Notes: generated from the sequence alone by a model not told the origin. DNA of 64,000 nucleotides from Octopus bimaculoides (GCF_001194135.2 NC_068989.1:44342402-44406401); one strand, 5' to 3'. Positions 3,299 to 64,000 are shown, counted from the stretch's first letter. Translations and numbers: made by a program.

Positions 3299-3671
3299 GG
3301 AGGCGCAATGGCCCAGTGGTTAGGGCAGCGGACTCGTGGTCATAGGATCGCGGTTTCGATTACCTGACCGGGCGTTGTGAGTGTTTATTGAGTGAAAACA
3401 CCTAAAGCTCCACGAGGCTCCGGCAGGGGATGGTGGCGAACCCTGCTGTACTCTTTCACCACAACTTTCTCTCGCTCTTACTTCCTGTTTCTCCTGTAAT
3501 TCAAAGGGTCAGCCTTGTCACACTGTGTCACACTGAATATCCCCGAGAACTACGTTAAGGGTACACGTGTCTGTGGAGTGCTCAGCCACTTGTACGTTAA
3601 TTTCACGAGCAGGCTGTTCCGTTGATCGGATCAACTGGAACCCTCGACGTCGTAAGCGACGGAGTGCCAAC
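3299..3671 (+). mobile_element. tRNA-derived SINE of about 380 bp (probably the octopus OR1-like family)
   Basis: A-box TGGCCCAGTGG and B-box GGTTTCGATT in the head; body near-identical to 40692-41049 and 49515-49907; 12-bp TSD ATTTA(A/G)AAAGTG with one mismatch. The family name is from memory and unverified. Confidence 0.85.
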
Positions 3672-25149: not shown

Positions 25150-26230
25150 ACCTCCATTTGCGTAGATCAGAGTGTTCTACTTTCCAGATTACATTTTCAC
25201 TGAATTTCTTTCATGTATTGTTCATACTTGGAGATTCCAAAATCTTCCATGAGGATGTTTTGTATTATGAGGATCCACGTCTCTTGAATCATTGAAATAT
25301 AATACTTTGTAAAGTCTAGCCGAAATGTAGTCTATTATTCTTCCCTTTTTTATAGGTTTCTAAATGTGATTGCTATGAATTTCATTTCGTTCATGACGAG
25401 GGCTGGTTCCACATCGCGGGACACTGGTTCTCCCTCTTATATATGGGTTCTTCCTCAACGGAAAGGATTTCTACGCAAGAGATATACCCCACCTCGCATA
25501 TTTAATACCTTCTTTCCCTGCAAGATCTTTTATAAGGAAGCTTGTTTACTCTAACGGACTCCATCTAGTCACTGTCCTAAGTGGATGGGGTGGTGCTGCT
25601 ATGAGGATGTACTTCCTGTCGTTTAGTATTTAGCTGTTATTGTTGCTGTTGCGGTGGGTCTTTCCTTGTTTTCGCTGGTTGTGACTGGAACAGAGGCCTT
25701 TGGGTCCCGGGGCTCTTCTAGTAATAAAGACGAAGCAATTTTATTTGTTAACTCACAAATTATGCTTGATGTCACCTTAGGACTGACAATCGCTGATTTT
25801 TTACTGTTGCTTTTGTTCTTTTAGACCTTCTGTTGAGAAAGCTTTTAGATAGATTTTGCTGCCAAATGTGTATTAACTGGGTCATCTACCTAGGGTATTG
25901 AGATTTAAGATGTTCCTCTTAACACTCTCTGCAGGAAATAGTTCTTGTATTGTTTTGTAAGTCCGTGCTGATCCCACCCAACCACGCATATCGTCAAATG
26001 TTATATGTGCGCTGACTAACTATCTTTATTATGCTACATAGATCCCTACTAACCAGTCGAATAAGGTCACCGATGTCCCTGACACTGAGCCTTGTGTTCT
26101 TTCTTCCCAAGTACTGTGGAACCAGCGCACGAACAAGTGTGTCGCAAACTATTTGAGTTTGTACTCACACTCCGTCCTCTGTTTTAAAGATAACACATGA
26201 TGTCTTATGCCCACCCTCTACTCACGAAGG
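25150..26230 (-). pseudogene. Old, stop-riddled copy of the ORF1-only (Gag-like) retroposon family
   Basis: Minus-strand translation LVPQYLGRKNTRLSVRDI aligns with LLPTYLGQRASRIRVEGI. GR*PS*YTFGSKIYLKAF aligns with the CCHC knuckle GRIPRCFKCGQKGHIRAKC. KYEQYMK aligns with the C-terminal KIYEQYLK at 34150. Confidence 0.6.
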
Positions 26231-28196: not shown

Positions 28197-30060
28197 AAAG
28201 GCGGTGAGCTGGCAGAAACGTTAGGACGCCGGGCGAAATGCTTCCCGGTATTTTGTCTGCCTTTACGTTCTGAGCTCAAATTCCGTCGAGGTCGACTTTG
28301 CCTTTCATCCTTTTGGGATCGATAAATCAAGTACCAGTCGCGTACTGGCGTCGATCTAATCGGCTGGCACCTTCCCCCCAAATTTCGGTCCCTGTGCCTA
28401 GAGTAGAAAATATATATGTGTATATATATATATATATATATACGAGTATATATGTACACACACTTTGTTGGTTTATTATTAAAATATCATTAGTATCAGA
28501 AAAATTCCGCCGAGGTCGACTTTGCCTTTCATCCTCTCAAGGTCGATAAAATAAGTACCAGTTGAGTANNNNNNNNNNNNNNNNNNNNNNNNNNNNNNNN
28601 NNNNNNNNNNNNNNNNNNNNNNNNNNNNNNNNNNNNNNNNNNNNNNNNNNNNNNNNNNNNNNNNNNNNNNNNNNNNNNNNNNNNNNNNNNNNNNNNNNNN
28701 NNNNNNNNNNNNNNNNNNNNNNNNNNNNNNNNNNNNNNNNNNNNNNNNNNNNNNNNNNNNNNNNNNNNNNNNNNNNNNNNNNNNNNNNNNNNNNNNNNNN
28801 NNNNNNNNNNNNNNNNNNNNNNNNNNNNNNNNNNNNNNNNNNNNNNNNNNNNNNNNNNNNNNNNNNNNNNNNNNNNNNNNNNNNNNNNNNNNNNNNNNNN
28901 NNNNNNNNNNNNNNNNNNNNNNNNNNNNNNNTTCTTTCGGAGTCGATAAAGTAAGTACCAGTTGCGTGCTGGAGTTGACGTAATTGACTAGCCTCCTACC
29001 CATAAAATTTCGGGCCTTGTATTTCTAGTAGAAAAAAAAAAAAGGTATTAGTTGTGTTTGTTTTCAGTGCAAACTCATTGCGAAATCCGAGCCTTTATAA
29101 ACCTATAATTCTCTCTCTCTCTCTCTCCTCTACCAACACAGTTTTATAAATACTGACAACGAAAACACGATCTCTCTGCTTGAATTTAAAACCCGATAAA
29201 CTAGTAACGAAGATGTCAGAAAAATTCTCCCATTTTGAGTAATCAACCAGAAGCCATACGGTCAATGCAATTTGAAGCCAAACTAATTTGGGATGGATGA
29301 TGGAACTGAAAATAGAAAAGGATAAGAAAGAAATCTCTATTCTTGTCCACATGTGATGTTGAAGCCATTGTGAAAATTTAAATACATGCTTTTCCCGCCT
29401 ACTCCATATACAAATAGAAAAATGAATAATAACTGCAAAAAATTAATAACAACATAAATTGAAATTAATGGAAACCAAGCAACGCGACATTGAGTCATGA
29501 AATGCTATTATTTTAAGAATAACTTTGCAAGCAACATCTTTTAAATTCAATTAATTAATGGTAAACCCCGAGCAAGATATAATTAAACTGACTCCATGTC
29601 AGGATTGTGTTCTAGAAATATAAAAATGAAAGTGTTGGATTTCTTTTGCAATCATTCAGGTTTAGAATGTGGTAACTTAACATAATTAGCTGCAACAATA
29701 TAACACCGATGCTTCATTTGCTAACAGGAAAGCGAGCATTCACGAAGAAAATTTAGAAGTTAGTAAGAATTAATTGAACAATGATATAACTTCGGTGAAG
29801 CAATATCAATCACAATAGAAACAGCAGGAGCAAAGATACGTGTTTACTTCTTGTCATAATTGTGGTCAAAGCGGCGAACTAGCATAATCGTTAGTACACC
29901 AGACAAAATGGTTAGTGGCATTTCTTCCGGTTTTACGTTCTGAGCTCAAATTTTGCCGAGGTCGACTTTGCCTTTCATCTTTTCAGAGTCGATAAATTAA
30001 TTACCAGTCAAACACTGGTAATTGATGTAACCAATTAGACCCATCTCCCGAAATTTCAGT
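28197..30060 (+). mobile_element. SINE type M copies (28197-28410, 28490-28568, 28931-29030, 29865-30060)
   Basis: Head GGCGGTGAGCTGGCAGAA, core and tails. Confidence 0.85.
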
Positions 30061-30758
30061 AAAAAAAATTAAAAAAAAAAAAAAAGGAATTTTTATTAAA
30101 GCACATTAAATGAGTCTCGTCTCGAAAAAAGATTGCTTATATCTGATTTACGAAATATTTATTCGGAGTTTTCTAGCGTTAATCCAGGGCTACCAGATGT
30201 AGGGGAGGTGTTTCATCAGTGGTTTCATTTTATTCTGCAGTTTTCTGCTTCCACCTGGTCTATTTCCTGCTTCAGTTTTGACTAGCCACATTGTAAAAAA
30301 TATTAGTATAGATTAATGTTCATAGTGTCTTGTAGAAACGGTGCCTTCTCTGCCATTCACAAGCCTAACATGAGTGTAATTTGTATTAACCTCTAAAAAT
30401 TCGAACTGCTGGTGGAACTAGCGATTCAAATTTTGAATTACGTACACGATGAGGGGAAAAAACCGTACCAGGTTCGAAAATTCAAGCAGCGAATATAGTT
30501 TTATTACTTCCACCTTAGAGAAGGCGGTGGTATTGTTTTCAGTCGTTTTTGTTTGTTTGTTTGCTTGCCCGTGGACAAGATATCTCCAGAACCGCTGGAT
30601 GGATTCAGATGAAACTTTCAGGGATGCTTGATTTTTTATTACCCATAACGAGCCAACAAAGAGGGACATACATCACATTGGGGACATAAAACGTATGATA
30701 TAATGAAAGAGGAAAAAATGTGAAATGAAAATGGTGTTACTTGCCCCATCAAGTAACA

Positions 30759-30867
30759 ACACGTGTCTGTGGAGTGCTCAGCCACTTGCACGTTAATTTC
30801 ACTAGCAGGCTGTTCCGTTGATCAGATCAACTGGAACCCTCGTCGTCGTAACCGACGGAGTGCCAAC
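30759..30867 (+). mobile_element. 5'-truncated OR1-like SINE nested in the retroposon 3' UTR
   Basis: Matches 3565-3671; 9-bp TSD CAAGTAACA at 30750-30758 and 30868-30876. Confidence 0.9.
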
Positions 30868-30926
30868 CAAGTAACATCACTTGCTTCGTTTTCTCTGTTC
30901 TCCATTATGTCTACCCCATACCTTTT

Positions 30927-32163
30927 TTAAAGTTCTTTATATTCTATAAACTGTGATAGTTTTTCTTTGTTAAAGTCTACTATCCACAGTTCACATTCCT
31001 CTTTGTGTCTCTTTATTTCCATCCTTTGCTGTTCCGTTATTAACAGAACCGTGCCTTCCACTCTATCTTCATTCTCTACATCAACATGAACTGTGTTTTC
31101 CCATTCAATTGCCCTTTCAAACAGTTCATCATCATATATTACACACGCAAAACAACCAATGGGAGGAGAAGTTTGTGTATCATTGTGTGAAAGTGTTCTT
31201 TTCTTTTGCTTTAGTGATAGAGGGGAGTGGGAATGCTTAGTGTCTCCAGGGCGAGGGTGGGACAAAGAGGGTATAGGTGGGCCTTGAGTAATTGTAGGGT
31301 GAAGTTCTGTATGTGTTGGACTTATCTTTTTTCTCTTCTCTTTCTTTTCCCGGTATTTTCCCATTCTTCCTCTTCTTTTTCTGTTTCTACTGGTACCATT
31401 TTTCCCTCCTCTTGCCCATCCTGAGGTTTCTCTTGTGGCTTCTCCTGGGGAACTTCTTGCATTTCTTCAGCTTCTTTATCCGGTGGAGGGCATTTCGCTC
31501 TTATGTGGCCCTTCTGGCCACATTTAAAACAGCGAGGGATTCTGCCCTCCACCCTTACATTCATTATAGTTTCATTCACTGTCACCGTTTCAACTATTTT
31601 TCCTATCGCTTCTTTTGAACCTTGAATAATCATATTCAAGATTTGGCCTTTCCAATTCACACTTTTCGTGACCTGGAGCACCACTATCTTGTCCAAGACA
31701 GCAGTTGCTATCCAGGCCACATCTATCTCTGGTGGAATTCCTTCCACCCTTATCCGAGACGCTCTCTGCCCCAGGTACGTGGGTAGAAGTACTAACTCTT
31801 CTTTAGTGATGTTGCCGAGTGTTTTTTTCGCCGTGTTTTCATTTTTGAACCTGACCTCAACTTCTCCGAATATTGACCCTCTGGCAAGATATGTGATGTC
31901 TTGCCAGATTGGCCTCAGCTCCTTCTCCACTTGTTCTATTGTCATATGGTCAATTTTTCCCTTCTTAATTGAGTAGGTTTTGTATGTCACCGTTCTTCCT
32001 TTCATTATTTTGTTGTTTCTTGCGGGGGTGGGGTTACTTGCACGTTGTAACCGTCCCGACTTAAAAGCTTCTTGTATTTTCCCATTTCGATCTCAACTTT
32101 ATCATCCGATTCTCGGGCGACGTCTACGAACTTCCTATTTCTTCCTTCCAATTCCTTATCCAT
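30927..32163 (-). pseudogene. Gag/ORF1p-like protein of about 410 aa: RRM-like region, one CCHC zinc knuckle, E/K-rich linker, unique C-terminal domain; two frameshifts (about 32020 and in an A-run near 31330)
   Basis: ORFs 31322-32005 (FGEVEVRF, LLPTYLG, VEGIPPEI, VEGRIPRCFKCGQKGHIRAKC) and 30927-31364, plus an upstream frame MDKELEGRNRKFV...VQVTHP. Confidence 0.85.
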
Positions 32164-32576
32164 AACTTCTATAGTTCTTAGTAGTTCTTTTTCAGATGCT
32201 GACAGCTCCGACCCGCTAAGGTCTGATTAAGACATTTTTTGACTTGCCATACTCCCCTCAAAACGCTGAGGAACAGTACAACCATACACACCGCTGCAAT
32301 GCAGCACAAAACGAATCACAATACTTTTCAATAAACAATAGGAATCACGTACTTTCAGGGATGTTTTGCCTCGTGACTGGCACGAACCGATTAGATTTTG
32401 GAATCGATCCGGTACCGGACAAAGATTCTGGATTATTTTTCTTGTTTTTTACTTCATTTTTGAGAGGGGTCGGGTTCATTTTTAGTATTCTCGTTTGTGA
32501 GAGCAGTTGAGTTTATTTCAGATATTCTCATTTTAAAAATCATCTCCAGCTAATCGTTGATAGGACGTTGCTGTTG

Positions 32577-34440
32577 TCGTTGGTGTTTCGTTTGGGTCAG
32601 TTGGGTTGGGGTGTGTGCGCTCCATGTGAGTGCTGTTGTTGTTTGACTGTTGTTTGCTGAATTGTTGGATTGTTGANNNNNNNNNNNNNNNNNNNNNNNN
32701 NNNNNNNNNNNNNNNNNNNNNNNNNNNNNNNNNNNNNNNNNNNNNNNNNNNNNNNNNNNNNNNNNNNNNNNNNNNNNNNNNNNNNNNNNNNNNNNNNNNN
32801 NNNNNNNNNNNNNNNNNNNNNNNNNNNNNNNNNNNNNNNNNNNNNNNNNNNNNNNNNNNNNNNNNNNNNNNNNNNNNNNNNNNNNNNNNNNNNNNNNNNN
32901 NNNNNNNNNNNNNNNNNNNNNNNNNNNNNNNNNNNNNNNNNNNNNNNNNNNNNNNNNNNNNNNNNNNNNNNNNNNNNNNNNNNNNNNNNNNNNNNNNNNN
33001 NNNNNNNNNNNNNNNNNNNNNNNNNNNNNNNNNNNNNNNNNNNNNNNNNNNNNNNNNNNNNNNNNNNNNNNNNNNNNNNNNNNNNNNNNTGGCTGGTGGT
33101 GGCCGTCCTCTTCAGCGCAGGGGGGCCCACTGAGATGTTGAGAGCATCAAGAGCTGCGGAGGTGGACTGGTGGGGGTCTGGACTGGAGGTGTTGGTCCGT
33201 GTGGGCTTGCCGGACCTCCACAAGATTGCGGGGGGGCTGGTGCTGCCGGGCGAAGCAGGGTTGGGAGTGGTGGTTGAGGGAAGACCGCCTGTATGTTTAC
33301 TATGCGGGGTGGGAGCATGAGGGCTGGGTGTCCCCAGAAGCGCGAGGAGGAGGAGGTGGAGAAAGAGTATCAGGAGGAAGAGGGTGCAACCGTGGAGGAG
33401 GAGAAATTGGAAGAGCAATATACAGTGGTAAAAAGAAAGAAGAGTAATGACTCACCACCAAAATGTCCGAGGAAGAAAAGAAAGGCAAGAGGAGAGGGGA
33501 AGCAGAGTGAAAAACAAGAGAATACAAATGAGAAGAGAAAAAAATGAAAAGACAACAAAAGTGAGGAACGAACGCAGAGACCATCAACTAGCAAGGAGGA
33601 AAGAGTACAGAAGAGAAAGGAAAATGAAAGAGAGACGATAGCAATACAGAATGAGAGACAGACATAGATAGAAATGCCAGCGACAGAGGACGGGATTGGT
33701 GAAGAGAGAAGGAGAGTGACACCAAAAGGGAGAAACCTGAGAACAATGGTGCAATACCCAAAAGGTGTAGAGATAGAGAAGAGAATTGCCAAGATGAAGA
33801 ACGTTATCAGAGTGAAATTAGCGGCCAAAGAGTATAGCGAAGGTTTTAAAGCTATTTTGCTGGAAAAAGAAAGAGGAGAGAAATTGAAGGAGTTGTTTGG
33901 TGAAAGAATAAAGATGACAGGAATACCAATTGGTTACGACGAATTGCCGCCGGTGGTGGCCTTCGAAGAGTTAATAGAGTATATGTTATAAACCAACAGA
34001 AGCAAAACCGATATGAACTGTTCATTTAAAAACAGTAAAATGGACTACCTGCTTATGGGGTGTAGGTAAGCGGGTTGACGAGCCGGTGTGCTATGATACC
34101 CTGCCGCCCGTGGTGGAACACGAAGAGTTGAAAAATTTTAGAGAAAAATATAAAATATATGAACAATATTTAAAAAAATGAAGATGTGAACTATTTACTT
34201 AAAAAAAAAACGGGAAAAAAAAAGAAAAATCTCCAAAATAATGACTAAATGTAACCACTCGACTCCAGGGATCGAGTGGGCATTGCGCCTCATTTTATCA
34301 TTTTCATATTCTCATTCGTTCTTTTAAGTTTTTTCTTCCTTGCTCGATTTCTTTTTGTATTCTTATTTCCCTGATTATATGTTTTACGTTGTCTTTGTAA
34401 TGTGTAAACTCTATTTTAGCCCCTTGTGGGTAATAAAAAT
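32577..34440 (+). mobile_element. ORF1-only retroposon, second lineage (5' part in a gap), with a chimeric 3' end
   Basis: VVVEGRPPVCLLCGVG.HEGWV is a degenerate knuckle (33250-33330); E/K linker; C-terminal ORF 33674-33991; 3' end TTTAGCCCCTTGTGGGTAATAAAAAT. Confidence 0.8.
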
Positions 34441-34444
34441 CGAG

Positions 34445-35432
34445 TACGTCGCCGTCTCAGAGTAACAACTTGTTTGTTTGAGTCTCATCATTTTTGACCA
34501 CGGTTGGACTGTTGAGTGTGAGGCCATATGAGGACGCAGTGTCCGAAGCACAACCCTTCTCAGAATGGGAAGGCTGTGGAGAAAGACAAAGAAGAAGTGG
34601 AAATTGGAGTACAAATTGAAGCAATGAAAGACGGAGACGGCAAAAGCGATACGAAGTGTGCCAGAGATACAGAAGCAATAAAGACGAAGGAAGACGGAAC
34701 GAAAGCGGCAAAGGAGGGGAGTGACGGGTTTGTCTGCCTCAAAATGAGGGAAAAGGCGAAATCAAGAGAACACTCGCAAGGACCTGCAGCAGAAACAGAG
34801 AGGACGTCTAAAAAAAGGTAGGGAGCCGCCTAAATTCAAGCATACGCATACAGTAGAGAGGGAACCAAGAGAGAAAGAATTTAGATATAAGACACTTTTA
34901 GTCTACTACGAAAAGATTGTGGAAAGGAGAATATCCAAGTGGAAGGGATTAGTAAGGGTAAAGCTAACCAGGAAGAAATTCAAGGGGGATGAAAGGTGTG
35001 TTCTATTGAATGACGATAGATATGACGTGTTCATGGATTCATATGGAGAACAGGTAACTATGGTTGACTGGCCGGTGCGGTATGATACCCTATCGGTCGT
35101 GGTGTAACATGAAGAGTTTAAAAATTTTAGAAAAAAATATAAAATATGATATGAACAATATTTTTTAAAAAATGAAGATGTGAACTTTTTGATTTTAAAA
35201 AAAAGGGGGAAAAAGAGGGAAAACTGTCCAAAATAATGATTAAATGTAACCACTCGACTTCGGGGGTCGAGTGGGCATTGCACTTCTTTTTTTATTCATT
35301 TTCATATTTTCATTCGTTCTTTTTTTTTTCTTCCTTATTCGATTTCTTTCTGCCTTTTTATTTCCCCGATTATGTGTTTTGTTTTGTCTTTGTAATGTAT
35401 AACTTCTATTTTTAGCCCCTTGTGGGTAATAA
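34445..35432 (+). mobile_element. ORF1-only retroposon, internally deleted copy, in tandem
   Basis: Charged linker at 34530-34820; C-terminal domain ERRISKWKGLVRVKL..PVRYDTL, homologous to 33674-33991; 3' UTR highly similar to 34085-34440. Confidence 0.8.
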
Positions 35433-35825
35433 ACAATTAAAGATATTGGTGTTGCCTTGGCAGAGGAGTGCTCTTGTTTTAAAAATGTTATTGTTGTAAG
35501 ACAACTTGTTGAAAATTATGTGATCTATCATAAAAACAGGCAGTTTTATCTCGGAATCAGAGATATTCTTTAGGAAATAGGCGATAACCCTAAGGACATA
35601 GAAACAGAGAAGGTAAAAAAACAAAAATGGTAAAGACGTTATTCATAGTAGCTTGGTTTATTGTATTCATTCGAACAATAAACTAAGTTTGCTCAAAACT
35701 TTAGATTTTCGGAAGCCACAAGTTACAATACCTGTTCAGCTAGTAAAGCTTGGGAAATAATTTTCTTTGATTAGTCACGTATAAAATATATTGAAAACAT
35801 TCTCATAATTATTGATTCATTTTAC

Positions 35826-36129: not shown

Positions 36130-36660
36130 ATAATAACAGCAAATAATATTAATCCTTTCTACTATAGACACAAGGCCTGAAATTTGGAGGAGGGGGATAG
36201 TCGATTACATCGACCTCAGTGTTCCACTGGTACCTAATTTATCGACCCCGAAAGGATGAAAGGCAAGGTCGACCTTGGCGGAATTTGAACTCAAAACGTA
36301 AAAACAGATGAAATGCCGCTAAGCATTTCCCCCGGCGTGTTAACGATTCTGCCAGCTCGCTGTCTTAATAATAATAATTCTTTCTACTAAAAGTACAAGG
36401 CCTGAAATTTGGTGGGAGGAGACTAGTCGATTACATCGACCCCAGTGTTTCACTGGTAATTAATTTATCGGCCCCGAAAGGATGAAAGGCAAAGTCGACC
36501 TCGGCGGAATTTGAACTCAGAACTTAAAGACGGACGAAATGTCGCTTAGCTTTTTGTCCGGCGTTCTAACGATTCTGCCAGTTCGCCGCCTTCTTAGTAA
36601 TAATAATGGCTTCAAATTTTGGTAGAAGGTCAGCAATTTCAGGGGAGGGAGTAAGTCGAT
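36130..36660 (-). mobile_element. Two head-to-tail SINE type M copies plus a third tail
   Basis: 36130-36365 and 36370-36592 are near-complete copies. Confidence 0.9.
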
Positions 36661-37249: not shown

Positions 37250-38100
37250 TTCCACTCGAGCTCATTAAATGGATTTTATCCCTTCGCGTCTTGGAGCACG
37301 CACCTAATCTCTGACAACGCAATCTTCGTGCTTAGTGTTGAAGAATTAATTGAGAGCCAATCGCACCGCAATCACTTCGGTAGCGATGTCTTTTCTAATC
37401 GCCTCTTATAAGTTTATAAGTAGGTTTTCCTCTACTCTAGTTTTATCTATTGTTACTTTCTTACTAAACCACATCGATTCTACGCTAATCATTCTTTTTA
37501 GCATTCTTTGTTGTTGACGATTTCCCCCGCTCAACTAATTCCTTAATCCGGTCTCTGCATGCTTGGCATGCCGGAAACAATGCGTTCAACTTCCAGTAAC
37601 CTGAGCCTTGCCTACGAAGCCCACTGCTTTGAATTTTTGACAATCTACGATATTTCTATCTACTGACCTGCAGAATACTTTATCTGCATAAGGTCTGAAT
37701 GACCCGATGTTGTTTCTTCATGTTCACAATGCCACATTCGAGAAATCAAGCCGGTACCTATTAGCTGGAAATGTCTGAGCCTGTTTGAGAGGTTTCTGCA
37801 TCCCCTCTCCTATCAGCTAATCCCTCACAGTCCTAGCGTGCATCTAAGATGGAATTCCAATCATCCACTCGTACAAAAAAGTGTAAGGTTCAATAGAGGA
37901 CCTTTTGACATCTAAAGAAAGCTTGCCACCTAGCCCCTGTTGGAGCGTAGACGGCTACTAGTCTAAAGGTATAGCCCTCGTTGTTGGATACGTCCAGCAT
38001 CACTAACCTGCCTTCTGAGTTCACAAAGACGGTCCATTTCAAGAGATCCAGACCTTTTCGAAACAACGCAGCATCTACATCCCTTGATCCCCTAACATTA
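37250..38100 (-). mobile_element. Degenerate L1/Tx1-clade LINE ORF2 fragment (APE endonuclease and linker)
   Basis: FNVRGS at the N-terminus, EGRLVMLDV..FRLVAVYAPT, WNSILD and GSGYWKLNA motifs, with many stops and deletions. Confidence 0.8.
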
Positions 38101-40544: not shown

Positions 40545-41049
40545 TCATTATACGTGGCTCTGTAGTAAGGTTTCGGATTCAATCACACTTTGTGGCACCT
40601 TCAGCAAGTGTCTTCTACCATAGCCTCGGACCGACCAAAGCCTTGTGAGTGGATTTAGTGGATAGAAACTGAAAGAAACCATGTGTGTGTGTAGGCGTAA
40701 TGGACTCGCGGTCGTAGAATCGCGGTTTCGATTCCCAAACCGGGCGTTGTGAGTGGTTATTGAGCAAAAACACCTAAAGCTCCGCGAGGCTCCGGCAGGG
40801 GGTGGTGGCGAACTCTGCTGCACTCTTTCACTACTACTTTCTTTCACTCTTTCTTCCGTTTTCTATTGTACCTGTATTTCAGAGGGCCAGCCTTGTCCCA
40901 CTCCGTGTCACGCTAAATATCCCCAAGAACTACGTTAAGGGTACACGTGTCTGTGGAGTGCTCAGCCACTTGCACGTTAATCTCACGAGCAGACTGTTCC
41001 GTTGATCGGATCAACTGAAACCCTCGTCGTCGTAACCGATGGAGTGCCA
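40545..41049 (+). mobile_element. CORE-type SINE head (40545-40690) followed directly by an OR1-like SINE (40692-41049)
   Basis: Similarity to the 6258 and 3299 copies. Confidence 0.9.
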
Positions 41050-42099: not shown

Positions 42100-42314
42100 T
42101 CTTCTTCTCTAGGCGTAAGGCCCGAAATTATTTGGCGGGTGGGGAGCAGTCGATTAGATCGACCCCAGTACGCAACTAGTTCTTAATTTATCGACCTCGA
42201 AAGTATGAAAGGCAAAGTCGACCTCGGCGGAATTTGAACTCAGAACATAAAGACAGACGAAATACCGCTAAGTATTTTGCCCGGCGTGCTAACGTTTCTG
42301 CCAGCTCGCCGTCT
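42100..42314 (-). mobile_element. SINE type M; decayed copy at 42715-42850
   Basis: Core, head and tail B are visible. Confidence 0.9.
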
Positions 42315-49514: not shown

Positions 49515-49907
49515 GTTGTTGTTGTTGTTGGCACTCCGTCGCTTACGACGTCGAGGGTTCCAGTTGATCTGATCAGCGGAACAGCCTGCTCGTGAAATTA
49601 ACGTGCAGGTGGCTGAGCATTCCACAGACACGTGCACCCTTAACGTAGTTCTCGGGGATATTCAGCGTGACACAGTGTGACAAGGCTGACCCTTTGAATT
49701 ACAGGCACAACAGAAACAGGAAGTAAGATTGAGAGAAAGTTGTGGTGAAAGAGTACAGCAGGGTTCGCCACCATCCCCTGCTGGAGCTTCGTGGAGCTTT
49801 AGGTGATTTCGCTCAATAAACACTCACAACGCCCGGTCTGGGAATCGAAACCGCGATCCTATGACCGCGAGTCCACTGCCCTAACCACTGGGCCATTGCG
49901 CCTCCAC
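49515..49907 (-). mobile_element. Young full-length OR1-like SINE with (CAA)n tail
   Basis: 12-bp TSD TAGTAATATAAT at 49503-49514 and 49908-49919. Confidence 0.95.
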
Positions 49908-58800: not shown

Positions 58801-60289
58801 TATATACGATTAGCGACATAAACATCAACATTTACTTCACATATATGGATGTCTCCCTGCAATGCAGTAGCTATAATGACATTCTAGTTGAGGGGGCTCA
58901 CAAGAGAACTACATTAACGGTGATAGATCTGCTTTGATTGAGACAATAAATTAAGTTTCTTGTAGTTTTGTCTAAATTCTGTCCAATATCTAACAAGCAT
59001 TCATATCATATATTATTTAATCTTGTAGTTGATACTGCAAATCTATCGCCTGTTCCTGCCGTTTCACATTAATTTTGTTAAACAGAATTGCAGGAGTTTT
59101 TTTTTTAAGAGTTCTATAACAGAATGAATGTTTGGATCAGATAATTATATAAGAAAAGCTTTCACCACTGACTACAAATCATCAGCAAAATACATTTGTA
59201 GGGAAAGGATGTCTCACTTAGCAAATTATTTGATTCTTTGGAAAATCCGCAAAGTTCCTAGTACAGAGATGTAAGTCTACCTCTCAATCCTTTTGCAGAA
59301 GCAGAATATTTCATAAGGTATGTGTTATACGAAGTTCTGGAATATGAGACAATAGCAACCACATTAATCTATATTCAGGTTGTAAAGCGGTGAGCAGGTA
59401 GAAACAGTGTCACACCGCCAAAATGCTGAGCAGCATTTTGTCCATCTTTACGTTCTGATTTCAATTTCCGCTGCGGTCGATTTTGCCTTTCATCCTNNNN
59501 NNNNNNNNNNNNNNNNNNNNNNNNNNNNNNNNNNNNNNNNNNNNNNNNNNNNNNNNNNNNNNNNNNNNNNNNNNNNNNNNNNNNNNNNNNNNNNNNTTCA
59601 GGTTTCTAATTACAAACCACATGTATGTGAATGCGTGTGTCCCTCACCACCGCTTGACAACCGGTGTTGGTGTTTTTACGTCCACGTAACTTAACAGTTC
59701 GGCAAAGGGAACCGATTGAATAATTATCAGGCTTTAAAAAATAAGTACTGGGGTCGATTCTTCAAGGTGGTATCCCAGCATGGCTGCAGTCTAATGACAG
59801 AAACAAGTAAAAGATAAAAGATGGCAATTTTTTTAATATACATTTAGTTTTCTTTTATCCTAATCGTTTACTTATTTCAGTCATGAGGCTGAATGTATCG
59901 ACCCCAGTACTTATTTCCTCTTTTGAAGCCTGGTACTTATTCTATCTGTCTTTTACCAAACCGCTAAGTTACGGGGATGTAAATATACTAGCACCGNNNN
60001 NNNNNNNNNNNNNNNNNNNNNNNNNNNNNNNNNNNNNNNNNNNNNNNNNNNNNNNNNNNNNNNNNNNNNNNNNNNNNNNNNNNNNNNNNNNNNNNNNNNN
60101 NNNNNNNNNNNNNNNNNNNNNNNNNNNNNNNNNNNNNNNNNNNNNNNNNNNNNNNNNNNNNNNNNNNNNNNNNNNNNNNNNNNNNNNNNNNNNNNNNNNN
60201 NNNNNNNNNNNNNNNNNNNNNNNNNNNNNNNNNNNNNNNNNNNNNNNNNNNNNNNNNNNNNNNNNNNNNNNNNNNNNNNTAAAAAAAAA

Positions 60290-61950
60290 ACACAAATGAG
60301 GTACTGAACCTCTTACAACAATTACAAATTGAGGTGCTGAGTTTCTTATCAATCAAATCTCACGAAAGTTCAGCAATTGTATTCAATCGTTCTTTCAAAT
60401 TGAGGCGCTAAGCCTCTTACCAAAATCACCAAGTTCAAATTGAGGCACTAAGACCTCTTACTCTACCTCCCCGACTAAATCTCTTGCCGCCTGCAGGCAA
60501 TCCTGCAGTCGCAAATCGGGGCCCCATAAGTAAAAATTGTATTCGTCTTTGGTAAAGGAGTCCATCACCCTGAAGAAATCATTTTCCGCCATGACCTCCG
60601 CAGTCACCTGCAGAGGCCAATCCGGGCTTTCAGTGCAGGACAGGACCTCCTCTTCCCGACCTTCCAGATTCCACACAAAGTTATCTACGGCCCCTCCCTT
60701 AAGAAAGAAGATCACAAATTCCTCATTCATTATACTGGGAGTGGGGATACAGTTTCCTCCGTCGGTGGCACAATTCCCACCGACGAGGTTTCAGGACATA
60801 CCGGCAGTGTACTGCTAACCGCCGGCACTGTCCCATTCTTTTTCTTGTCTTTGATACGGGAGGGTGTAGTTCCTCTGCTTTAATTGGAGGATCATCCCTC
60901 TCACCCGCAGCTTTGGGGTCCTTCGGTAGGCAATCATTGTTGCCCACCTTCTTCCTTTTTTCCCCTTTTTTCCGGGGAGGTCTCCACCTCCTCGACTACT
61001 TCCATCTCTCCCTCTGAAGGAGGAGGGGGAGATCTTCCTCAACCAACTGTTCCAGGACCCTACTCTGGTCCTGGGACAGTTCTTTTTAATGTGCCCTGGT
61101 TCTAGGCACAGGTGACACTTGGGGGGAGAGGCGTCCCTCAAGTATCATTGGGTACCTGCAGCCAGCCATTTTCAAAAAATCTGGAAAGACCAGATTCTTA
61201 GCTGATTGGATCTACAGGGTCAAAACAGCTTTGGACCCAACTCAATCAGCCGCCAGCAATATTTTAACAATAAGCAGCTTGGATCCGCTGCCACCCAGAC
61301 CCCGGCGTATAGTGTCTTCTATTCACTCGGGTTCTATCCCAGGTGGCAACCCGCAAACCCAAGCTCTTGTCAACTTCTTCCCACAATACGTAGGAAGAAA
61401 CAAAATCTCTTTGCCCTCTAAGTGCTGATTCGCAAATTTGCGAGCCTTCTCAGGGGTGTCAAATAGCAACCACACCGTTGCATACTCGACCCGCCTGGCA
61501 ATAAATTTTATAGATGGCAGATACTCTGCCAACTCTTTTTCAATTTGTATCTTTTTAAAGAGGACGATGGTGTCGAGCGACTTTGAGTGACTTCAAAGTA
61601 TTTCATCCACTGTTTGGGTGGGACAATCTCCCACTCCAACGCAGTGTTGTTCATCTTTTTTGCCACGTTTTGGGGGAAAAGAGTTAAAAAAAAAAAAACA
61701 CAAATGAAGGAAGGAAGAAGAAAAGAGAAAAAAAACAGTTCAAAAACACAGCAAATTATTCTTCTGGCCGTCTTGGTACTCCTGGCCAACTCGGTAATCC
61801 ACTTGGTAATCCAGAGCACAAAGCAATCACACAACAATTTCACCAAAAAATGGGTAAAAAAATAAGCACAATGTTCGCAGTTATTGGAGAAGGGATAAGT
61901 CCCCAAAACACACTTCTCACCGCTAAGTGAGACACTAAGCACAACTACAG
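60290..61950 (-). mobile_element. ORF1-only retroposon, third lineage, disrupted by stops and frameshifts
   Basis: IVPPKQWM, ATVWLLF, FLPTYCGKKLTRAWVCGLPPGI, ILEGR(fs)PKCHLCLEPGHIKKNCP; C-terminal ORF 60458-60730; then a short repetitive 3' UTR with no ORF2 before the gap. Confidence 0.85.
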
Positions 61951-62160: not shown

Positions 62161-62793
62161 TCCTTACCACACGAAAACTAATTTAAGCCTTATGAAAGAA
62201 CTTACCTAGTTTCGAAAACTAAGCGACTCCTTAGAAAAGAGAGATTACAAAAGAAATTCTGAAATGATGATTCATTGTCTGATACCAGGTCTGTTTTGCG
62301 TAAATTTTTATCTTAATTAACCTAAACTAAGATAACCAATCCTGCAATTTTATGAAAATGTCAATTGCCTGAACATGTCAAGCTAACTGACTATGCTTTC
62401 TAGTATGCACTGAATATATACTACTAAATATTCTCTGAAGAATGACTGTTCTTCAAAGATAAATCCTTTATGAATTTTTTTTTTTTTAATTGCTATACGA
62501 GAAAGTAAAATATCATTGAAGAACTTTGAAATGTCTGCAGATTATTGCTATTTCAAAGCTTCCTTTCACAAGTTTTAGAAAATAAGAAGAAATATAAAAT
62601 ACATGCAAACATTTGATAATTCAACATGTCTTCCTCTTTCTCTCTCTTCCTTCTTGTTATTTTCAAGCCATGTATTCCGTTTTCCCTCTAGTTTCATATT
62701 TTATGAAATCAGTGTTAAGATTGTTCGTGCAGTGAAGGCGGCGAGCTGACAGAATCGTTAGAACGCCGGGCGAAATACTTAGCGGTATTTCGT

Positions 62794-64000
62794 CTATGTG
62801 AGTTTTGTTGGTTACGCGTCGCACATGTGTTCGTGGTGAAAATTGCTGGTTATTAGTGTTATTATTTATAATAACTATTCTTTTATTAACTGCAGTTTCT
62901 GTTAAAATTCTAATTGTTGGAGTTTTTATTTGAAAACACTAAGTGCTTGTAGAAAGCACACGTTGGCAGCTGGGAGTCGAACCCGGCAGCTGTCGACGAA
63001 CAAGTCAGACTACATAAAATATTAAAAAATGATGGAAGTGAAAGATAGCGTGGTTCAAATACAACCACCGGAGCAATTTATGCTTGACAAAAAACAGAAA
63101 ACAATAATTTTAAAAACTTATTGTTTACAAAAAAGAAAAATCGAAAGATTTACAGAAGAGAAGATTGAAAAGTATTCGAAGGAAATATGGAGCGACGTAG
63201 TGTATGTGACAAGAGGTAAGAAGTTTGGTACAGTGGAAGTAAGGTTTGCCAACAAGGAAATGGCACAAAAGCATTCCGTAGAGATTCTGAAAACGGAAGA
63301 CGTGACGCTCATCCCCACCTATATGGGGATGAGAACGTCCAGAATTAATATAACAAGGGTCCCACCGGAAGTGGATCCTATGTGGGTGGTGGAGGCAGTC
63401 CTAGTCAAAGAGGAATAGAAAATTACCCTCCTCCAGGCTGCCGTTATCGAAAACGCTAACTTGACTGGTCAATCAGTTAGTTTCATTATCCAAGCTGACC
63501 CCAAAATAATTGAAGCAATTCCCGAGACAATTCAGATAGGGGAGGAGAACCTGGTGGTGTTTGTTGAGGGTCGAAAACCCCGGTGTCTTTTGTGCGGTCA
63601 ATTAGGCCACATTCGAAGGAAAATGAGGAAAACTAGGAAGAGGAGAAAGAAGAAGAAAAAGAAGAAAAAGATGAGAAGAAAACAACAAACAAAAGAAAAA
63701 TACAATCAGCAGCTCAACCGAGAGTGGCGACTACTACAGAACAACGACCAAAAAAGACTGCAAGAAGAGAAAAAGAGGAGAAAGGCATAATAGCCGTATA
63801 CAGTAAAGATACTGAACTAATGAGAGACATTCAATTAATTAAGACTGCAAAAAAAATAGATAACTTTTCGGAGAAATACAACAATTATGACGTGTATGAA
63901 GTCTCAAATAAGACTCATAGAATTTTACAAAACAAACACCGTAAGTCAGTATCATCTATGAGACTGGACTTTAATAAGTCTATATTTAATGGACTACCAG
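62794..64000 (+). mobile_element. ORF1-only retroposon, fourth lineage, inserted into a SINE head (62733-62793) and running off the window
   Basis: ORFs 63029-63418 and 63461-63790 are separated by one in-frame stop: FGTVEVRF, LIPTYMG, RVPPEVDPMWV, VEGRKPRCLLCGQLGHIRRK, K/E linker, then a C-terminal domain resembling 33674-33991. Confidence 0.85.

What the first reader, a model, noticed from the sequence alone, without database searches (positions are those of the whole stretch)
30614..32363. Complete, TSD-flanked retroposon encoding only a Gag/ORF1-like protein: a diversified 'half-LINE' family
Seen: a perfect 13-bp TSD brackets about 1.6 kb holding a 5' UTR, one roughly 410-aa frame (RRM-like region, CCHC knuckle, E/K linker, C-terminal domain) and a 3' UTR, with no endonuclease or RT. 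Because both ends are defined, ORF2 is not missing through truncation. Homologues at 25.2-26.2, 32.6-34.4, 34.4-35.4, 60.3-62.0 and 62.8-64.0 kb keep xPTYxG, xxPPxx.xW, VEGRxPxCxxC and a post-linker domain, yet share only roughly a third of residues by eye. Known: ORF1-only LINE derivatives exist (mammalian HAL1), and single-knuckle RRM ORF1s occur in L1/Tx1 elements. Inference: several deeply diverged lineages, each keeping this architecture, suggest a long-lived class of non-autonomous retroposons that supply their own RNA-binding or capsid-like protein and borrow RT in trans. The C-terminal domain may be novel. I do not know of a description in cephalopods.
Basis: partly seen in the sequence, partly recalled or inferred. 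Interest (0 to 1): 0.88.

Follow-up and report, generated by a model that had tools for sequence, protein, structure and literature searches.

The report
ORF1-only half-LINE retroposon in octopus
This is a dead 1.7-kb copy of a mobile element that kept only the RNA-binding-protein gene and the 3' end of an octopus L1/Tx1-type LINE. It must have borrowed that LINE's reverse transcriptase to move, so it is an octopus counterpart of the mammalian "half-L1" (HAL1).

Summary
Window 30627-32350 (minus strand) is a retroposed element bracketed by an exact 13-bp target-site duplication. It has one broken ORF1-type frame (about 444 aa when read through) and no endonuclease or RT.

The protein is not capsid-like. 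It has two RRM domains, one CCHC knuckle, a charged linker and a small alpha/beta C-terminal domain, which is the "type I" LINE ORF1p layout.

The same protein family is the ORF1 of 5.4-5.6 kb autonomous LINEs in Octopus sinensis, O. vulgaris and Argonauta hians. Their ORF2 has an APE endonuclease, RT and zf-RVT, and is closest to human L1 ORF2p.

Autonomous and ORF1-only elements share a 3' terminus with a covarying 4-bp hairpin just before AATAAA.

Three more TSD-flanked 1.6-1.74 kb ORF1-only elements turned up in O. sinensis and O. vulgaris. ORF1-only elements keep the ORF1/ORF2 junction (GGTAAGT-N-ATG) and then jump to the 3' UTR. There are at least three different junctions, each shared by several elements.

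Two ORF1-only pairs are each other's closest sampled relatives (about 50% amino-acid identity), and their uncorrected pN/pS is 0.40-0.43 with synonymous sites saturated.

This is a HAL1-like half-LINE family: a new member of a known kind. Mobilisation in trans is inferred. A genome-wide census and expression could not be tested.

The parts
30614..30626 (.). Target-site duplication, copy at the element's 3' side (ACTTTCAGGGATG)
   Evidence: Exact 13-mer, only two occurrences in the window. It abuts the conserved LINE 3' terminus.
32351..32363 (.). Target-site duplication, copy at the element's 5' side
   Evidence: Contigs of paralogous empty sites join 30621 to 32361.
30627..32350 (-). ORF1-only non-autonomous LINE derivative ('half-LINE'), 1,724 bp (1,606 bp without the nested SINE)
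   Evidence: No EN/RT similarity. No terminal inverted repeats or LTRs.
32251..32350 (-). 5' UTR (about 100 nt). Whether the 5' end is complete could not be shown by homology.
   Evidence: Sequence upstream of the ATG at 32250. The 5' ends of relatives do not align convincingly.
32008..32250 (-). ORF1 N-terminal segment (MASQKMS*SDL...), with an in-frame stop at 32227-32229 and a frameshift at its 3' end (about 32005-32008)
   Evidence: Three-frame translation; family HMM match E=2e-12; coordinates.
31778..31993 (-). RRM1 of ORF1p
   Evidence: AF2 model, block pLDDT 87-97 over the RRM core, beta-alpha-beta-beta-alpha-beta topology. Foldseek best hits are tandem RRM1-2 structures: IMP3, Sxl, HuR, UP1, E about 1e-4.
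31550..31765 (-). RRM2 of ORF1p (begins with the conserved ...RIRVEGIPPEID..W motif)
   Evidence: motif conservation.
31490..31531 (-). CCHC zinc knuckle (CFKCGQKGHIRAKC)
   Evidence: Pfam PF00098, E=0.0004, 20.8 bits, exactly at the gathering score. The Cys positions are invariant in the family alignment.
31325..31489 (-). Acidic/basic low-complexity linker, with a frameshift within 31325-31364
   Evidence: low pLDDT.
30930..31166 (-). ORF1p C-terminal domain (about 80 aa). It is homologous to the C-terminal domain of the autonomous LINE ORF1p.
   Evidence: Aligns with copies D, F and B, with P0001/P0020/P0021/P0032/P0005 and with the L008 ORF1. AF2 of the D copy gives pLDDT 79.7 and a beta-alpha-beta-beta-alpha-beta fold. 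No PDB match better than E=0.06.
30875..30885 (-). Remnant of the ORF1/ORF2 junction and the ORF2 start codon (AGCAAGTGATG; GGTAAGTNATG in intact relatives)
   Evidence: junction conserved in L008, L010, L012 autonomous units and kept in L011, L012u1, L013, L015. (A aligns with L013 and L012u1 from this motif to the 3' end). Coordinates.
30750..30867 (+). Nested insertion: one 9-bp TSD copy (CAAGTAACA, 30750-30758) plus a 5'-truncated SINE (30759-30867). The second TSD copy is at 30868-30876.
   Evidence: 94-95% identical to the 3' part of SINE copies at 3504-3671, 40883-41049 and 49527-49694. A DNA contig without it joins 30749 to 30868 with 9 shared letters.
30641..30653 (-). 3'-terminal hairpin (4-bp stem GCUC/GGGU, loop GUUAU) immediately 5' of AATAAA
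   Evidence: In ten element tails, 95% of cells are paired, 3 of 4 pairs show compensatory changes, and 0/500 shuffles reach the covariation score. The register of the second alignment was set by hand.
30627..30640 (-). AATAAA plus 8 nt; the element ends here with no poly(A) tail
   Evidence: The same kind of end is seen in autonomous LINEs L007, L008, L009 and L012 and in ORF1-only L011, L012u1 and L013.
30462..30613 (.). Left half of the high-copy host repeat into which the element inserted
   Evidence: k-mer depth roughly 1,000-6,500 times the single-copy flank. The repeat is contiguous in O. sinensis locus L007 17820-17977.
32364..32567 (.). Right half of the host repeat
33090..34440 (+). 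Copy D: ORF1-only relative. Its 5' part is lost in the N gap 32677-33089. It has a degraded RRM2/CCHC, a linker, an intact-looking C-terminal domain, a 449-nt 3' UTR and the canonical tail.
34441..35440 (+). Copy F: 5'-truncated ORF1-only relative (starts in or near the CCHC region), head-to-tail behind D, with the canonical tail ...CCCCTTGTGGGTAATAAACAATTAAAG
60818..61592 (-). Copy C: degraded ORF1 (RRM1/2, CCHC). Its 3' side runs into the N gap 59997-60279, so whether it has ORF2 is unknown.
63026..64000 (+). Copy B: ORF1 with one stop, 44% identical to A in the core. It runs off the window end, so whether it has ORF2 is unknown. Its 5' end probably lies near 62792, inside a SINE copy.
25997..26164 (-). 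Copy E: only a weak remnant (LVPQYLGRKNTRLSVRDI motif)
   Evidence: HMM E=0.0015 over 25 residues.

Best explanation
Window 30627-32350 is a now-dead copy of a non-autonomous 'half-LINE'. It derives from an octopod L1/Tx1-type LINE that lost almost exactly its ORF2 coding region.

What it keeps: a 5' UTR, ORF1, the ORF1/ORF2 junction with the ORF2 ATG, about 150 nt of 3' UTR, and the 3' terminus (a small hairpin followed by AATAAA and 5-9 nt, with no poly(A) tail). ORF1 encodes an N-terminal helical region, two RRMs, one CCHC knuckle, a charged linker and a small alpha/beta C-terminal domain.

Proposed mechanism (inferred):
1. The element is transcribed from its own 5' end.
2. Its ORF1p coats its own RNA in cis.
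3. The RNA's 3' hairpin and terminus are recognised by ORF2p (APE endonuclease plus RT) supplied in trans by autonomous relatives.
4. Target-primed reverse transcription inserts a copy with a 13-19 bp target-site duplication, sometimes 5'-truncated.

Such ORF1-only lineages arose at least three times in octopods, judged from their different deletion junctions. At least two of them then persisted and diversified while ORF1 stayed under purifying selection.

Shown here: the anatomy, the TSDs, the empty sites, homology to autonomous LINEs, the shared junctions, hairpin covariation and pN/pS below 1. Inferred: transcription, cis action of ORF1p, hairpin recognition and trans supply of ORF2p.
For: Insertion. 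Exact 13-bp TSD. Paralogous empty sites in DNA contigs and in O. sinensis. No TIR or LTR.

No ORF2. No EN/RT similarity in A, D, F, L011 or L001 tails, while the positive control L010 is detected.

Same ORF1 in autonomous LINEs. L007 (O. sinensis) has ORF1 followed by Exo_endo_phos, RVT_1 and zf-RVT. L008 (O. vulgaris) has three tandem units, one with an open 1,132-codon ORF2 frame. L009 (Argonauta hians) is 5.4 kb with a 16-bp TSD. L012 has three tandem units. ORF2 matches human L1 ORF2p at E=2e-71 against 1e-24 for R2.

Shared 3' terminus. It is the only nucleotide-level match between A and any other family element compared, the L008 LINE (alignments). The hairpin covaries.

Other complete ORF1-only elements. 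L012 unit 1 is 1,691 bp with a perfect 16-bp TSD. L013 is about 1.6 kb with a 15-19 bp TSD inside a SINE. L011 is 1,737 bp with an imperfect TSD of 11-18 bp.

Junction. TAA-GGTAAGT-N-ATG is conserved in autonomous units and kept in ORF1-only elements. A, L013 and L012u1 share one post-junction 3' UTR. L011 and L015 share another. D and F share a third.

Persistence. L013+L012u1 have bootstrap 99 and L011+L015 bootstrap 96. Their pN/pS is 0.43 and 0.40 (Jukes-Cantor dN 0.39 and 0.36; dS about 2.3, saturated).

Protein. Tandem RRM fold and CCHC knuckle.
Against:
- The window copy is broken (one stop, two frameshifts). k-mer depth suggests only about 1-5 copies at 90% identity or more.
- Only about a dozen loci with genomic context were sampled, and they were chosen through gene annotations, which favours intact ORFs.
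- Deep nodes of the ORF1 tree are unresolved. The clade A+P0001+L013+L012u1 has bootstrap 28, so unsampled autonomous elements could fall inside the ORF1-only pairs.
- dS is saturated, so dN/dS values are rough.
- Completeness at the 5' end was not shown by homology.
- The hairpin has only 4 bp and rests on ten related sequences.
Confidence: 0.85

Rival explanations
1. Recurrent by-products only. Each ORF1-only copy is made afresh from an autonomous LINE transcript (RT template switching, aberrant RNA processing or recombination) and is a dead end. There are no self-propagating ORF1-only lineages.
For: At least three different deletion junctions show that ORF2 loss is recurrent. Copy D is a chimera carrying a second partial C-terminal-domain end plus an F-like 3' UTR, which suggests template switching. 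Deep tree nodes are unresolved and sampling is thin.
Against: A (window), L013 and L012u1 (O. sinensis) sit at different loci with their own TSDs, yet share the same junction and about 150 nt of post-junction 3' UTR. Their ORF1 proteins are only 34-49% identical, and L013 and L012u1 still have open frames of 396 and 490 codons. pN/pS of 0.40-0.43 within ORF1-only pairs implies selection on ORF1 along lineages that already lacked ORF2.
Confidence: 0.08
2. Host gene family. The ORF1-like proteins are domesticated RNA-binding genes, and the window copy is a processed pseudogene of one of them.
For: Several relatives are annotated as genes in O. sinensis, O. vulgaris and O. bimaculoides. Some have long open frames, and pN/pS is below 1. 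L014 (P0115, three accessions) has no recognisable LINE tail.
Against: The same protein is ORF1 of full-length LINEs with EN/RT. ORF1-only copies carry the LINE 3' terminus, the ORF2 start remnant and TSDs, and they sit inside SINEs and other repeats. The window holds five or six decayed copies. A domesticated member cannot be excluded for L014.
Confidence: 0.04
3. Post-insertion deletion. A full-length LINE inserted here and later lost ORF2 through a genomic deletion.
For: Internal deletions of LINE copies are common in general (established knowledge). Only this copy is seen in the window.
Against: The deletion end-points (just after the ORF2 ATG, and the 3' UTR) are the same as in L013 and L012u1 at unrelated loci in another species. 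The same random deletion would have had to occur three times.
Confidence: 0.02

Closest known systems
HAL1 (half-L1) of mammals
   Same: A non-autonomous LINE derivative that encodes only ORF1p and depends on the parent's ORF2p. It originated independently several times (PMC5753468, citing Smit 1999 and Bao & Jurka 2010). The octopus elements likewise show at least three independent junctions.
   Different: HAL1 derives from mammalian L1, whose type II ORF1p has coiled coil, RRM and CTD (Pfam Transposase_22), and it ends in poly(A). The octopus ORF1p is type I (two RRMs, CCHC and its own C-terminal domain; no Transposase_22 hit). The octopus elements end in a hairpin plus AATAAA plus a few nt, with no poly(A) tail.
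HeT-A and other ORF1-only telomeric Jockey-clade retrotransposons of Drosophila
   Same: ORF1-only elements that rely on ORF2p of related elements. ORF2 was lost repeatedly, yet some ORF1-only lineages gave rise to new ORF1-only lineages (PMC13534243). The octopus pairs L013/L012u1 and L011/L015 show the same pattern.
   Different: The Drosophila elements are in the Jockey clade, are telomere-specialised and are arranged in terminal arrays. The octopus elements are L1/Tx1-type. They are dispersed inside SINEs and other interspersed repeats, and one abuts a LINE tandem array. No telomeric context is evident.
L1-Tx1 LINEs with type I ORF1p (Tx1 clade, plant L1)
   Same: The parent elements have ORF1 with RRM(s) plus a CCHC knuckle, which defines type I (PMC5203782). 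Their ORF2 has APE endonuclease, RT and zf-RVT and is closest to L1 ORF2p. L1-Tx1 is widespread in molluscs (PMC10294476). In O. vulgaris, 13 recently active L1-Tx1 families with 421 insertions averaging about 5.4 kb are annotated (PMC13282606), which matches the 5.4-5.6 kb units seen here.
   Different: The window element lacks ORF2. I could not place the RT in a reference phylogeny, so 'Tx1 clade' is not proven. Strict target-site specificity, typical of many Tx1 elements (my knowledge), was not seen: targets were a host repeat, a SINE, (ATT)n and a sequence with no repeat noted.
SINE/LINE pairs with a shared 3' tail ('stringent' recognition, e.g. eel UnaL2/UnaSINE1; from my own knowledge)
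   Same: The non-autonomous element carries the partner LINE's 3'-terminal stem-loop and short terminal sequence, presumably the RT recognition signal. There is no poly(A) tail.
   Different: SINEs are short, transcribed by Pol III and non-coding. This element is 1.6 kb, looks like an mRNA and encodes ORF1p.
EKA gene family of powdery mildew (ORF1-derived)
   Same: A large family of ORF1-only derivatives of a LINE (PMC4641428).
   Different: EKA members became host effector genes. There is no evidence of domestication here.

Membership tests
Non-LTR retroposon insertion (target-primed reverse transcription product) | Flanking target-site duplication of variable length, with an empty site demonstrable | tested here: met
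   13-bp exact TSD. Empty paralogous sites. Relatives have a 16-bp exact TSD (L009, L012u1), a 15-19 bp one (L013) and an imperfect 11-18 bp one (L011).
Non-LTR retroposon insertion (target-primed reverse transcription product) | Family-wide fixed 3' end with variable 5' truncation; no LTRs or TIRs | tested here: met
   Conserved 3' terminus in ten elements. Copy F is 5'-truncated. No terminal repeats other than the TSD.
Half-LINE (ORF1-only non-autonomous LINE derivative, HAL1-like in the broad sense) | ORF1 present and ORF2 absent between intact element ends | tested here: met
   The ORF2 start remnant is followed directly by the 3' UTR.
Half-LINE (ORF1-only non-autonomous LINE derivative, HAL1-like in the broad sense) | ORF1 and termini homologous to an autonomous LINE in the same group of organisms | tested here: met
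   ORF1 and 3' terminus are shared with L007, L008, L009 and L012 LINEs. Homology at the 5' end was inconclusive.
Half-LINE (ORF1-only non-autonomous LINE derivative, HAL1-like in the broad sense) | The same deletion junction is shared by several independent insertions (a family, not a one-off deletion) | tested here: met
   A, L013 and L012u1 share one junction. L011 and L015 share another. D and F share a third.
Half-LINE (ORF1-only non-autonomous LINE derivative, HAL1-like in the broad sense) | Mobilised in trans by the parent's ORF2p | not testable with these tools
   Needs a retrotransposition assay. Here it is only inferred from TSD-flanked copies that lack ORF2.
HAL1 proper (mammalian L1-derived) | ORF1p of L1 type II (Transposase_22: coiled coil, RRM, CTD) and a poly(A) tail | tested here: not met
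   No Transposase_22 hit. The protein has two RRMs plus CCHC. There is no poly(A) tail.
L1 superfamily / L1-Tx1 (parent LINE) | ORF2 with an N-terminal APE-type endonuclease and RT, closer to L1 than to other clades | tested here: met
   Pfam Exo_endo_phos, RVT_1 and zf-RVT. Human L1 ORF2p E=2e-71 over EN+RT, against R2 at 1e-24. This holds for the autonomous relatives, not for the window element.
L1 superfamily / L1-Tx1 (parent LINE) | RT-domain phylogeny places it within the Tx1 clade | not tested
   No reference RT set (Repbase/Dfam) was available. The label rests on the ORF1 type and on the published O. vulgaris annotation (PMC13282606).
Type I LINE ORF1p (Khazina & Weichenrieder classes, as summarised in PMC5203782) | At least one RRM followed by a CCHC zinc knuckle | tested here: met
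   Two RRMs by structure prediction and fold search. CCHC by Pfam.
Retroviral/LTR-retrotransposon Gag (capsid-forming) | Capsid (CA) helical domains | tested here: not met
   The confident part of the model is two alpha/beta RRMs, and no CA-like match appears among the top Foldseek hits. A CCHC knuckle alone is not diagnostic.

The most novel reading that the evidence does not exclude
Octopods harbour self-sustaining, dispersed (non-telomeric) ORF1-only retroposon lineages that parasitise L1-Tx1 LINEs. These lineages have persisted long enough to diverge to about 50% ORF1p identity while ORF1, the GGUAAGU-N-AUG junction and a 3' hairpin stayed under selection. That would be a natural experiment showing that ORF1p must be made in cis while ORF2p can be borrowed. 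The conserved GGUAAGU, a perfect 5' splice-site/U1-binding consensus 8 nt before the ORF2 AUG, may itself be a functional signal, for example for termination-reinitiation or for U1-dependent RNA handling.
Probability: 0.5. Interest if true: 0.6.

Novelty: new member of a known kind. Interest (0 to 1): 0.5.

Why it matters
ORF1-only 'half-LINEs' are documented in the papers found here for mammalian L1 (HAL1) and for Drosophila telomeric Jockey elements. [quoted passage not shown]

Finding the same strategy in a mollusc, in a different LINE clade with a different ORF1p type and a hairpin-type 3' end, suggests it is a general evolutionary route for LINE parasites.

Purifying selection on ORF1 in lineages that lack ORF2 bears on the open question of what ORF1p does in cis.

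Practically, these elements are annotated as 'uncharacterized protein' genes in octopus genomes. The recent O. vulgaris repeat annotation does not use the terms 'ORF1' or 'non-autonomous' in its main text (PMC13282606, term search). Recognising them would clean up both gene sets and TE libraries.

Tried and rejected
- **Word-indexed protein searches** with the read-through protein, the family alignment and the C-terminal-domain alignment gave 1, 2 and 0 hits. Only the exhaustive HMMER search was informative (385 hits at E<=1e-3).
- **Encoding contigs.** P0001 and the window ORF are not on record.
- **Non-coding RNA.** Rfam found nothing meaningful in 30-33 kb. There are no tRNA genes in the window.
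- **5' ends** of A, L007, L008, L009 and L011 do not align convincingly.
- **Copy C** has no significant ORF2-start similarity downstream before the N gap, so its status stays open.
- **The EN fragment** at 37253-38060 (-) is only 32-40% identical to this clade's ORF2 and has no adjacent ORF1. I rejected it as a partner of the copies here.
- **Nucleotide search** of A against all related elements matched only the 33-nt 3' tail.
- **C-terminal domain.** Foldseek gave only weak generic ferredoxin-like hits (E>=0.06), which is no basis for calling the fold novel or known.
- **Deep ORF1 phylogeny** is unresolved. The first bootstrap script timed out and the second had a distance-cap bug.
- **DNA transposon reading** rejected: no TIRs.
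- **Bao & Jurka 2010** (PMC2923044) is not held.
Full report
**1. The observation**

- ACTTTCAGGGATG occurs exactly twice in the window, at 30614 and 32351, bracketing 1,724 bp.
- The window is repeat-rich, so 13-mer direct repeats 1-3 kb apart are common: 249 runs against about 2 in shuffles. The repeat alone proves little.
- Three further facts make it a target-site duplication.
  - It abuts a 3' terminus that is conserved across the family.
  - Contigs from genomic runs of the same organism contain host-repeat copies that join 30621 directly to 32361.
  - A copy of the same host repeat in O. sinensis (L007 17820-17977) runs uninterrupted across the insertion point.
- The element lies on the minus strand.
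- Its 3' UTR carries a later, nested insertion of a 5'-truncated SINE (30759-30867) with its own 9-bp TSD, CAAGTAACA. A contig without that SINE also exists.
- Without the SINE the element is 1,606 bp.

**2. The coding region**

- The frame is broken by one stop (32227-32229) and two frameshifts. Read through, it gives about 444 aa.
- Pfam recognises only the CCHC knuckle.
- An AlphaFold2 model of the intact core (window 31325-32092, aligned with 71 relatives) has mean pLDDT 83. It shows two consecutive beta-alpha-beta-beta-alpha-beta domains.
- Foldseek against the PDB returns tandem-RRM proteins at E about 1e-4: IMP3 RRM12, Sxl, HuR and hnRNP A1 UP1.
- The protein therefore has an N-terminal region, RRM1, RRM2, a CCHC knuckle, a charged linker and a C-terminal domain.
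- This is the 'type I' LINE ORF1p architecture, defined as at least one RRM plus a CCHC knuckle and described for plant L1 and the Tx1 group (PMC5203782). It is not a capsid-type Gag.
- The C-terminal domain (about 80 aa) aligns between copies A, B, D and F and the ORF1 proteins of autonomous elements.
- Its best model (pLDDT 79.7; the other four about 63) is again beta-alpha-beta-beta-alpha-beta. No PDB match is better than E=0.06.
- Its fold is thus a generic ferredoxin-like sandwich, and I make no claim that it is novel.

**3. Relatives**

- An exhaustive HMMER search with the intact 227-aa ORF found 385 proteins at E<=1e-3.
- All hits that carry an organism name are octopod: O. bimaculoides, O. 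vulgaris, O. sinensis and Argonauta hians.
- Fetching the DNA around them was decisive.

| Locus | Species | Structure |
|---|---|---|
| L007 | O. sinensis | ORF1 followed by ORF2 pieces with Exo_endo_phos, RVT_1 and zf-RVT; about 5.57 kb, embedded in (ATT)n |
| L008 | O. vulgaris | three head-to-tail full-length units; one ORF2 reads open over 1,132 codons |
| L009 | A. hians | 5.4-kb element with ORF1 and ORF2, perfect 16-bp TSD |
| L012 | O. sinensis | three tandem full-length units |
| L010 | species not named (Logan contig) | contig breaks just after the ORF2 start (LGCLNVKGL) |

- The ORF2 aligns with human L1 ORF2p across EN and RT at E=2e-71, against 1e-24 for R2.
- The family is therefore the ORF1 of an L1/Tx1-type LINE.
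- This fits the published O. vulgaris repeat annotation, which lists 13 recently active L1-Tx1 families with 421 insertions averaging about 5.4 kb (PMC13282606).

**4. ORF1-only elements are real and recurrent**

- In the window, copies A, D and F each go from the ORF1 stop through a 185-450 nt 3' UTR to the same kind of terminus, with no EN/RT similarity. F is 5'-truncated and sits head-to-tail behind D.
- Elsewhere I found further ORF1-only loci.

| Locus | Species | Size | Flanks |
|---|---|---|---|
| L012 unit 1 | O. sinensis | 1,691 bp | perfect 16-bp TSD |
| L013 | O. sinensis | about 1.6 kb, inside a SINE | 15-19 bp TSD |
| L011 | O. vulgaris | 1,737 bp | imperfect TSD of 11-18 bp |
| L014, L015 | O. 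sinensis, O. vulgaris | ORF1 with no ORF2 within 8 kb | not defined |

- Of the eight annotated genome loci I could fetch, four hold autonomous units and five hold ORF1-only units. L012 holds both.
- The sample is small and biased towards intact ORFs. It does not show that 'most copies continue into ORF2'.

**5. The shared 3' end**

- At the nucleotide level, A matches a related element only over its last 33 nt: 88% to the L008 LINE.
- All ten tails examined, five from ORF1-only lineages and the rest autonomous, end in ...GCCC-CTTGT-GGGT-AATAAA plus 5-9 nt, with no poly(A) tail.
- The GCCC/GGGT stem is paired in 95% of cells. Three of its four pairs show compensatory changes (CG to GC, GU to AU or UG). 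No shuffle out of 500 reaches the covariation score, and slid controls give 10-48% pairing.
- Ten related sequences and a hand-set register are a modest basis.
- Even so, this is the kind of 3' stem-loop that 'stringent' LINE reverse transcriptases recognise (my knowledge). It is the obvious candidate for the signal that lets ORF1-only RNA use the LINE's ORF2p.

**6. The deletion junctions**

- In autonomous units the ORF1 stop, a conserved GGTAAGT, one base and the ORF2 ATG follow each other (TAA-GGTAAGT-N-ATG).
- ORF1-only elements keep this motif and the ATG, then continue into 3' UTR sequence.
- A, L013 and L012u1 share one post-junction sequence of about 150 nt.
- L011 and L015 share a second junction.
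- D and F share a third, which keeps about 30 nt of ORF2 (ATGAACAATATTT...).
- Hence ORF2 was lost at least three times, and each loss was inherited by several insertions.
- A post-insertion deletion at this locus is therefore very unlikely.

**7. Persistence and selection**

- In a neighbour-joining tree of the ORF1 core, the supported groups are A+P0001 (bootstrap 100), L013+L012u1 (99), L011+L015 (96) and L011+L015+P0020 (91). Deeper nodes are unresolved.
- The two ORF1-only pairs are only 47-49% identical in protein over the codon-aligned ORF1 (51% in the trimmed core), yet they retain open frames of 282-490 codons.
- pN/pS is 0.43 and 0.40. Jukes-Cantor dN is 0.39 and 0.36 and dS is about 2.3, which is saturated.
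- Because each pair shares its deletion junction, most of this divergence probably accumulated after ORF2 was lost.
- That argues for purifying selection on ORF1 in non-autonomous lineages.
- Saturation and thin sampling keep this from being conclusive.

**8. Mechanism**

- The best-supported model has four steps.
  1. The element is transcribed from its own 5' end.
  2. ORF1p binds its own RNA in cis.
  3. ORF2p from autonomous relatives recognises the 3' hairpin and terminus.
  4. Target-primed reverse transcription creates TSD-flanked, sometimes 5'-truncated copies.
- Shown: the anatomy, the TSDs, the empty sites, the homology, the junction sharing, the covariation and pN/pS below 1.
- Inferred: transcription, cis action, RT recognition and trans supply.

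**9. Comparison with what is known**

- It works like mammalian HAL1, which encodes only ORF1p and arose several times (PMC5753468).
- It also works like the ORF1-only telomeric Jockey elements of Drosophila, where ORF2 was lost repeatedly and ORF1-only lineages spawn new ones (PMC13534243).
- It is not a member of HAL1 proper. There is no Transposase_22 ORF1p and no poly(A) tail, and the parent clade differs.
- Full-text searches for 'octopus' with retrotransposon/ORF1/zinc-knuckle terms and for 'octopus' with 'L1-Tx1' turned up no paper describing ORF1-only derivatives in cephalopods. In term searches, the octopus brain-LINE paper uses 'ORF1' only about human L1, the mollusc TE survey has it once (in a reference title), and the O. 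vulgaris annotation has neither 'ORF1' nor 'non-autonomous'.
- Repbase and Dfam could not be checked.

**10. Verdict**

The protein is a tandem-RRM ORF1p rather than a Gag. The C-terminal domain is not specific to the half-elements. The parent LINE is known. This copy is dead.
- It is a new member of a known kind. It is of solid but not exceptional interest, chiefly as an independent, non-telomeric, non-mammalian case of long-lived ORF1-only LINE parasites.

Noticed in passing
window 30759-30867; also 3504-3671, 40883-41049, 49527-49694: An extremely abundant SINE-like repeat. Its k-mer depth is roughly 40,000-120,000 times the single-copy flank. It ends ...GGAGTGCCAAC, followed in one copy by (AAC)n. 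The copy inside the element is 5'-truncated with a 9-bp TSD, and a contig lacking it exists, so the insertion may be polymorphic or absent from a paralog.
   Followed up: partly
window 30462-30613 + 32364-32567; L007 17002-17173 and 17820-17977: The host of the insertion is itself a high-copy interspersed repeat, with k-mer depth roughly 1,000-12,000 times the single-copy flank. It is also present in O. sinensis, where that copy carries a different insertion of about 650 bp some 40 nt away. I did not identify the repeat.
   Followed up: partly
window 32107-32441: In three of four DNA runs, a 337-nt contig matches this stretch with 32 differences and one 1-nt insertion after 32234. The stretch covers the element's 5' part, the TSD and 78 nt of host repeat. 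This is either a segmental duplicate of the whole insertion or a second insertion at the same site of another host-repeat copy.
   Followed up: no
L008 4053, 9332; L010 1849; L012 8980, 14258; window 30875-30885: GGTAAGT, a perfect 5' splice-site/U1-binding consensus, sits between the ORF1 stop and the ORF2 ATG (TAA-GGTAAGT-N-ATG) in autonomous units. It is retained in ORF1-only elements. Its function is unknown; it could be a termination-reinitiation or RNA-processing signal.
   Followed up: partly
L008 2300-17026; L012 2200-16850: Full-length LINEs of this clade form head-to-tail tandem arrays (three units each) in O. vulgaris and O. sinensis. In L012 a TSD-flanked ORF1-only element sits immediately upstream of the array. 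In the window, F follows D head-to-tail. This may reflect a preference for inserting next to an existing 3' end.
   Followed up: no
window 33992-34140: Copy D is chimeric. After its own ORF1 stop comes a second, partial C-terminal-domain end (...VDEPVCYDTLPPVVEHEELKNFREKYKI...) followed by an F-like 3' UTR. This suggests template switching or recombination between subfamilies. P0001 (O. bimaculoides) is likewise mosaic, with an A-like N-terminal part and a D-like C-terminal domain.
   Followed up: partly
window 37253-38060 (-): A fragment of an APE-type endonuclease from a different, distantly related L1-like LINE (32-40% identity to this clade's ORF2). There is no adjacent ORF1.
   Followed up: partly
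L007 9720-9779 and 15348-15380: The O. sinensis full-length LINE is embedded in an (ATT)n microsatellite on both sides. The other insertions examined are in a SINE, in another interspersed repeat, or in sequence where no repeat was noted, so target choice looks loose rather than strictly site-specific.
   Followed up: no
L015 7716-7790 and 9716-9790: The O. vulgaris ORF1-only copy L015 lacks the terminal hairpin and AATAAA. It is flanked by direct repeats of about 75 nt, far longer than the other TSDs. This could be a long TSD, a duplication or a recombination product.
   Followed up: no
window, more than 20 places (e.g. 28200-28413, 36150-36358, 42102-42307); 62735-62791: A second SINE family (...GTTAGCACGCCGGGCGAAATGCTTAGC...) has more than 20 copies in the window. 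L013's ORF1-only element is inserted in one copy of it. Copy B appears to start inside another, after ...GTATTTCGTCT near 62791.
   Followed up: partly
L001-L004 (Logan contigs, 1,690-1,703 bp, four runs): A relative (P0007, 294 aa, no C-terminal domain) assembles to nearly the same 1.7-kb contig in four independent runs, with no ORF2 start. This fits an ORF1-only transcript or repeat unit. The species and library type are unknown.
   Followed up: partly
L014 7971-8843: P0115 (O. sinensis LOC115225585, three accessions) is a divergent family member with no ORF2, no recognisable LINE tail and no TSD found. It lies inside a larger gene model. It may be a domesticated or intronic copy.
   Followed up: no
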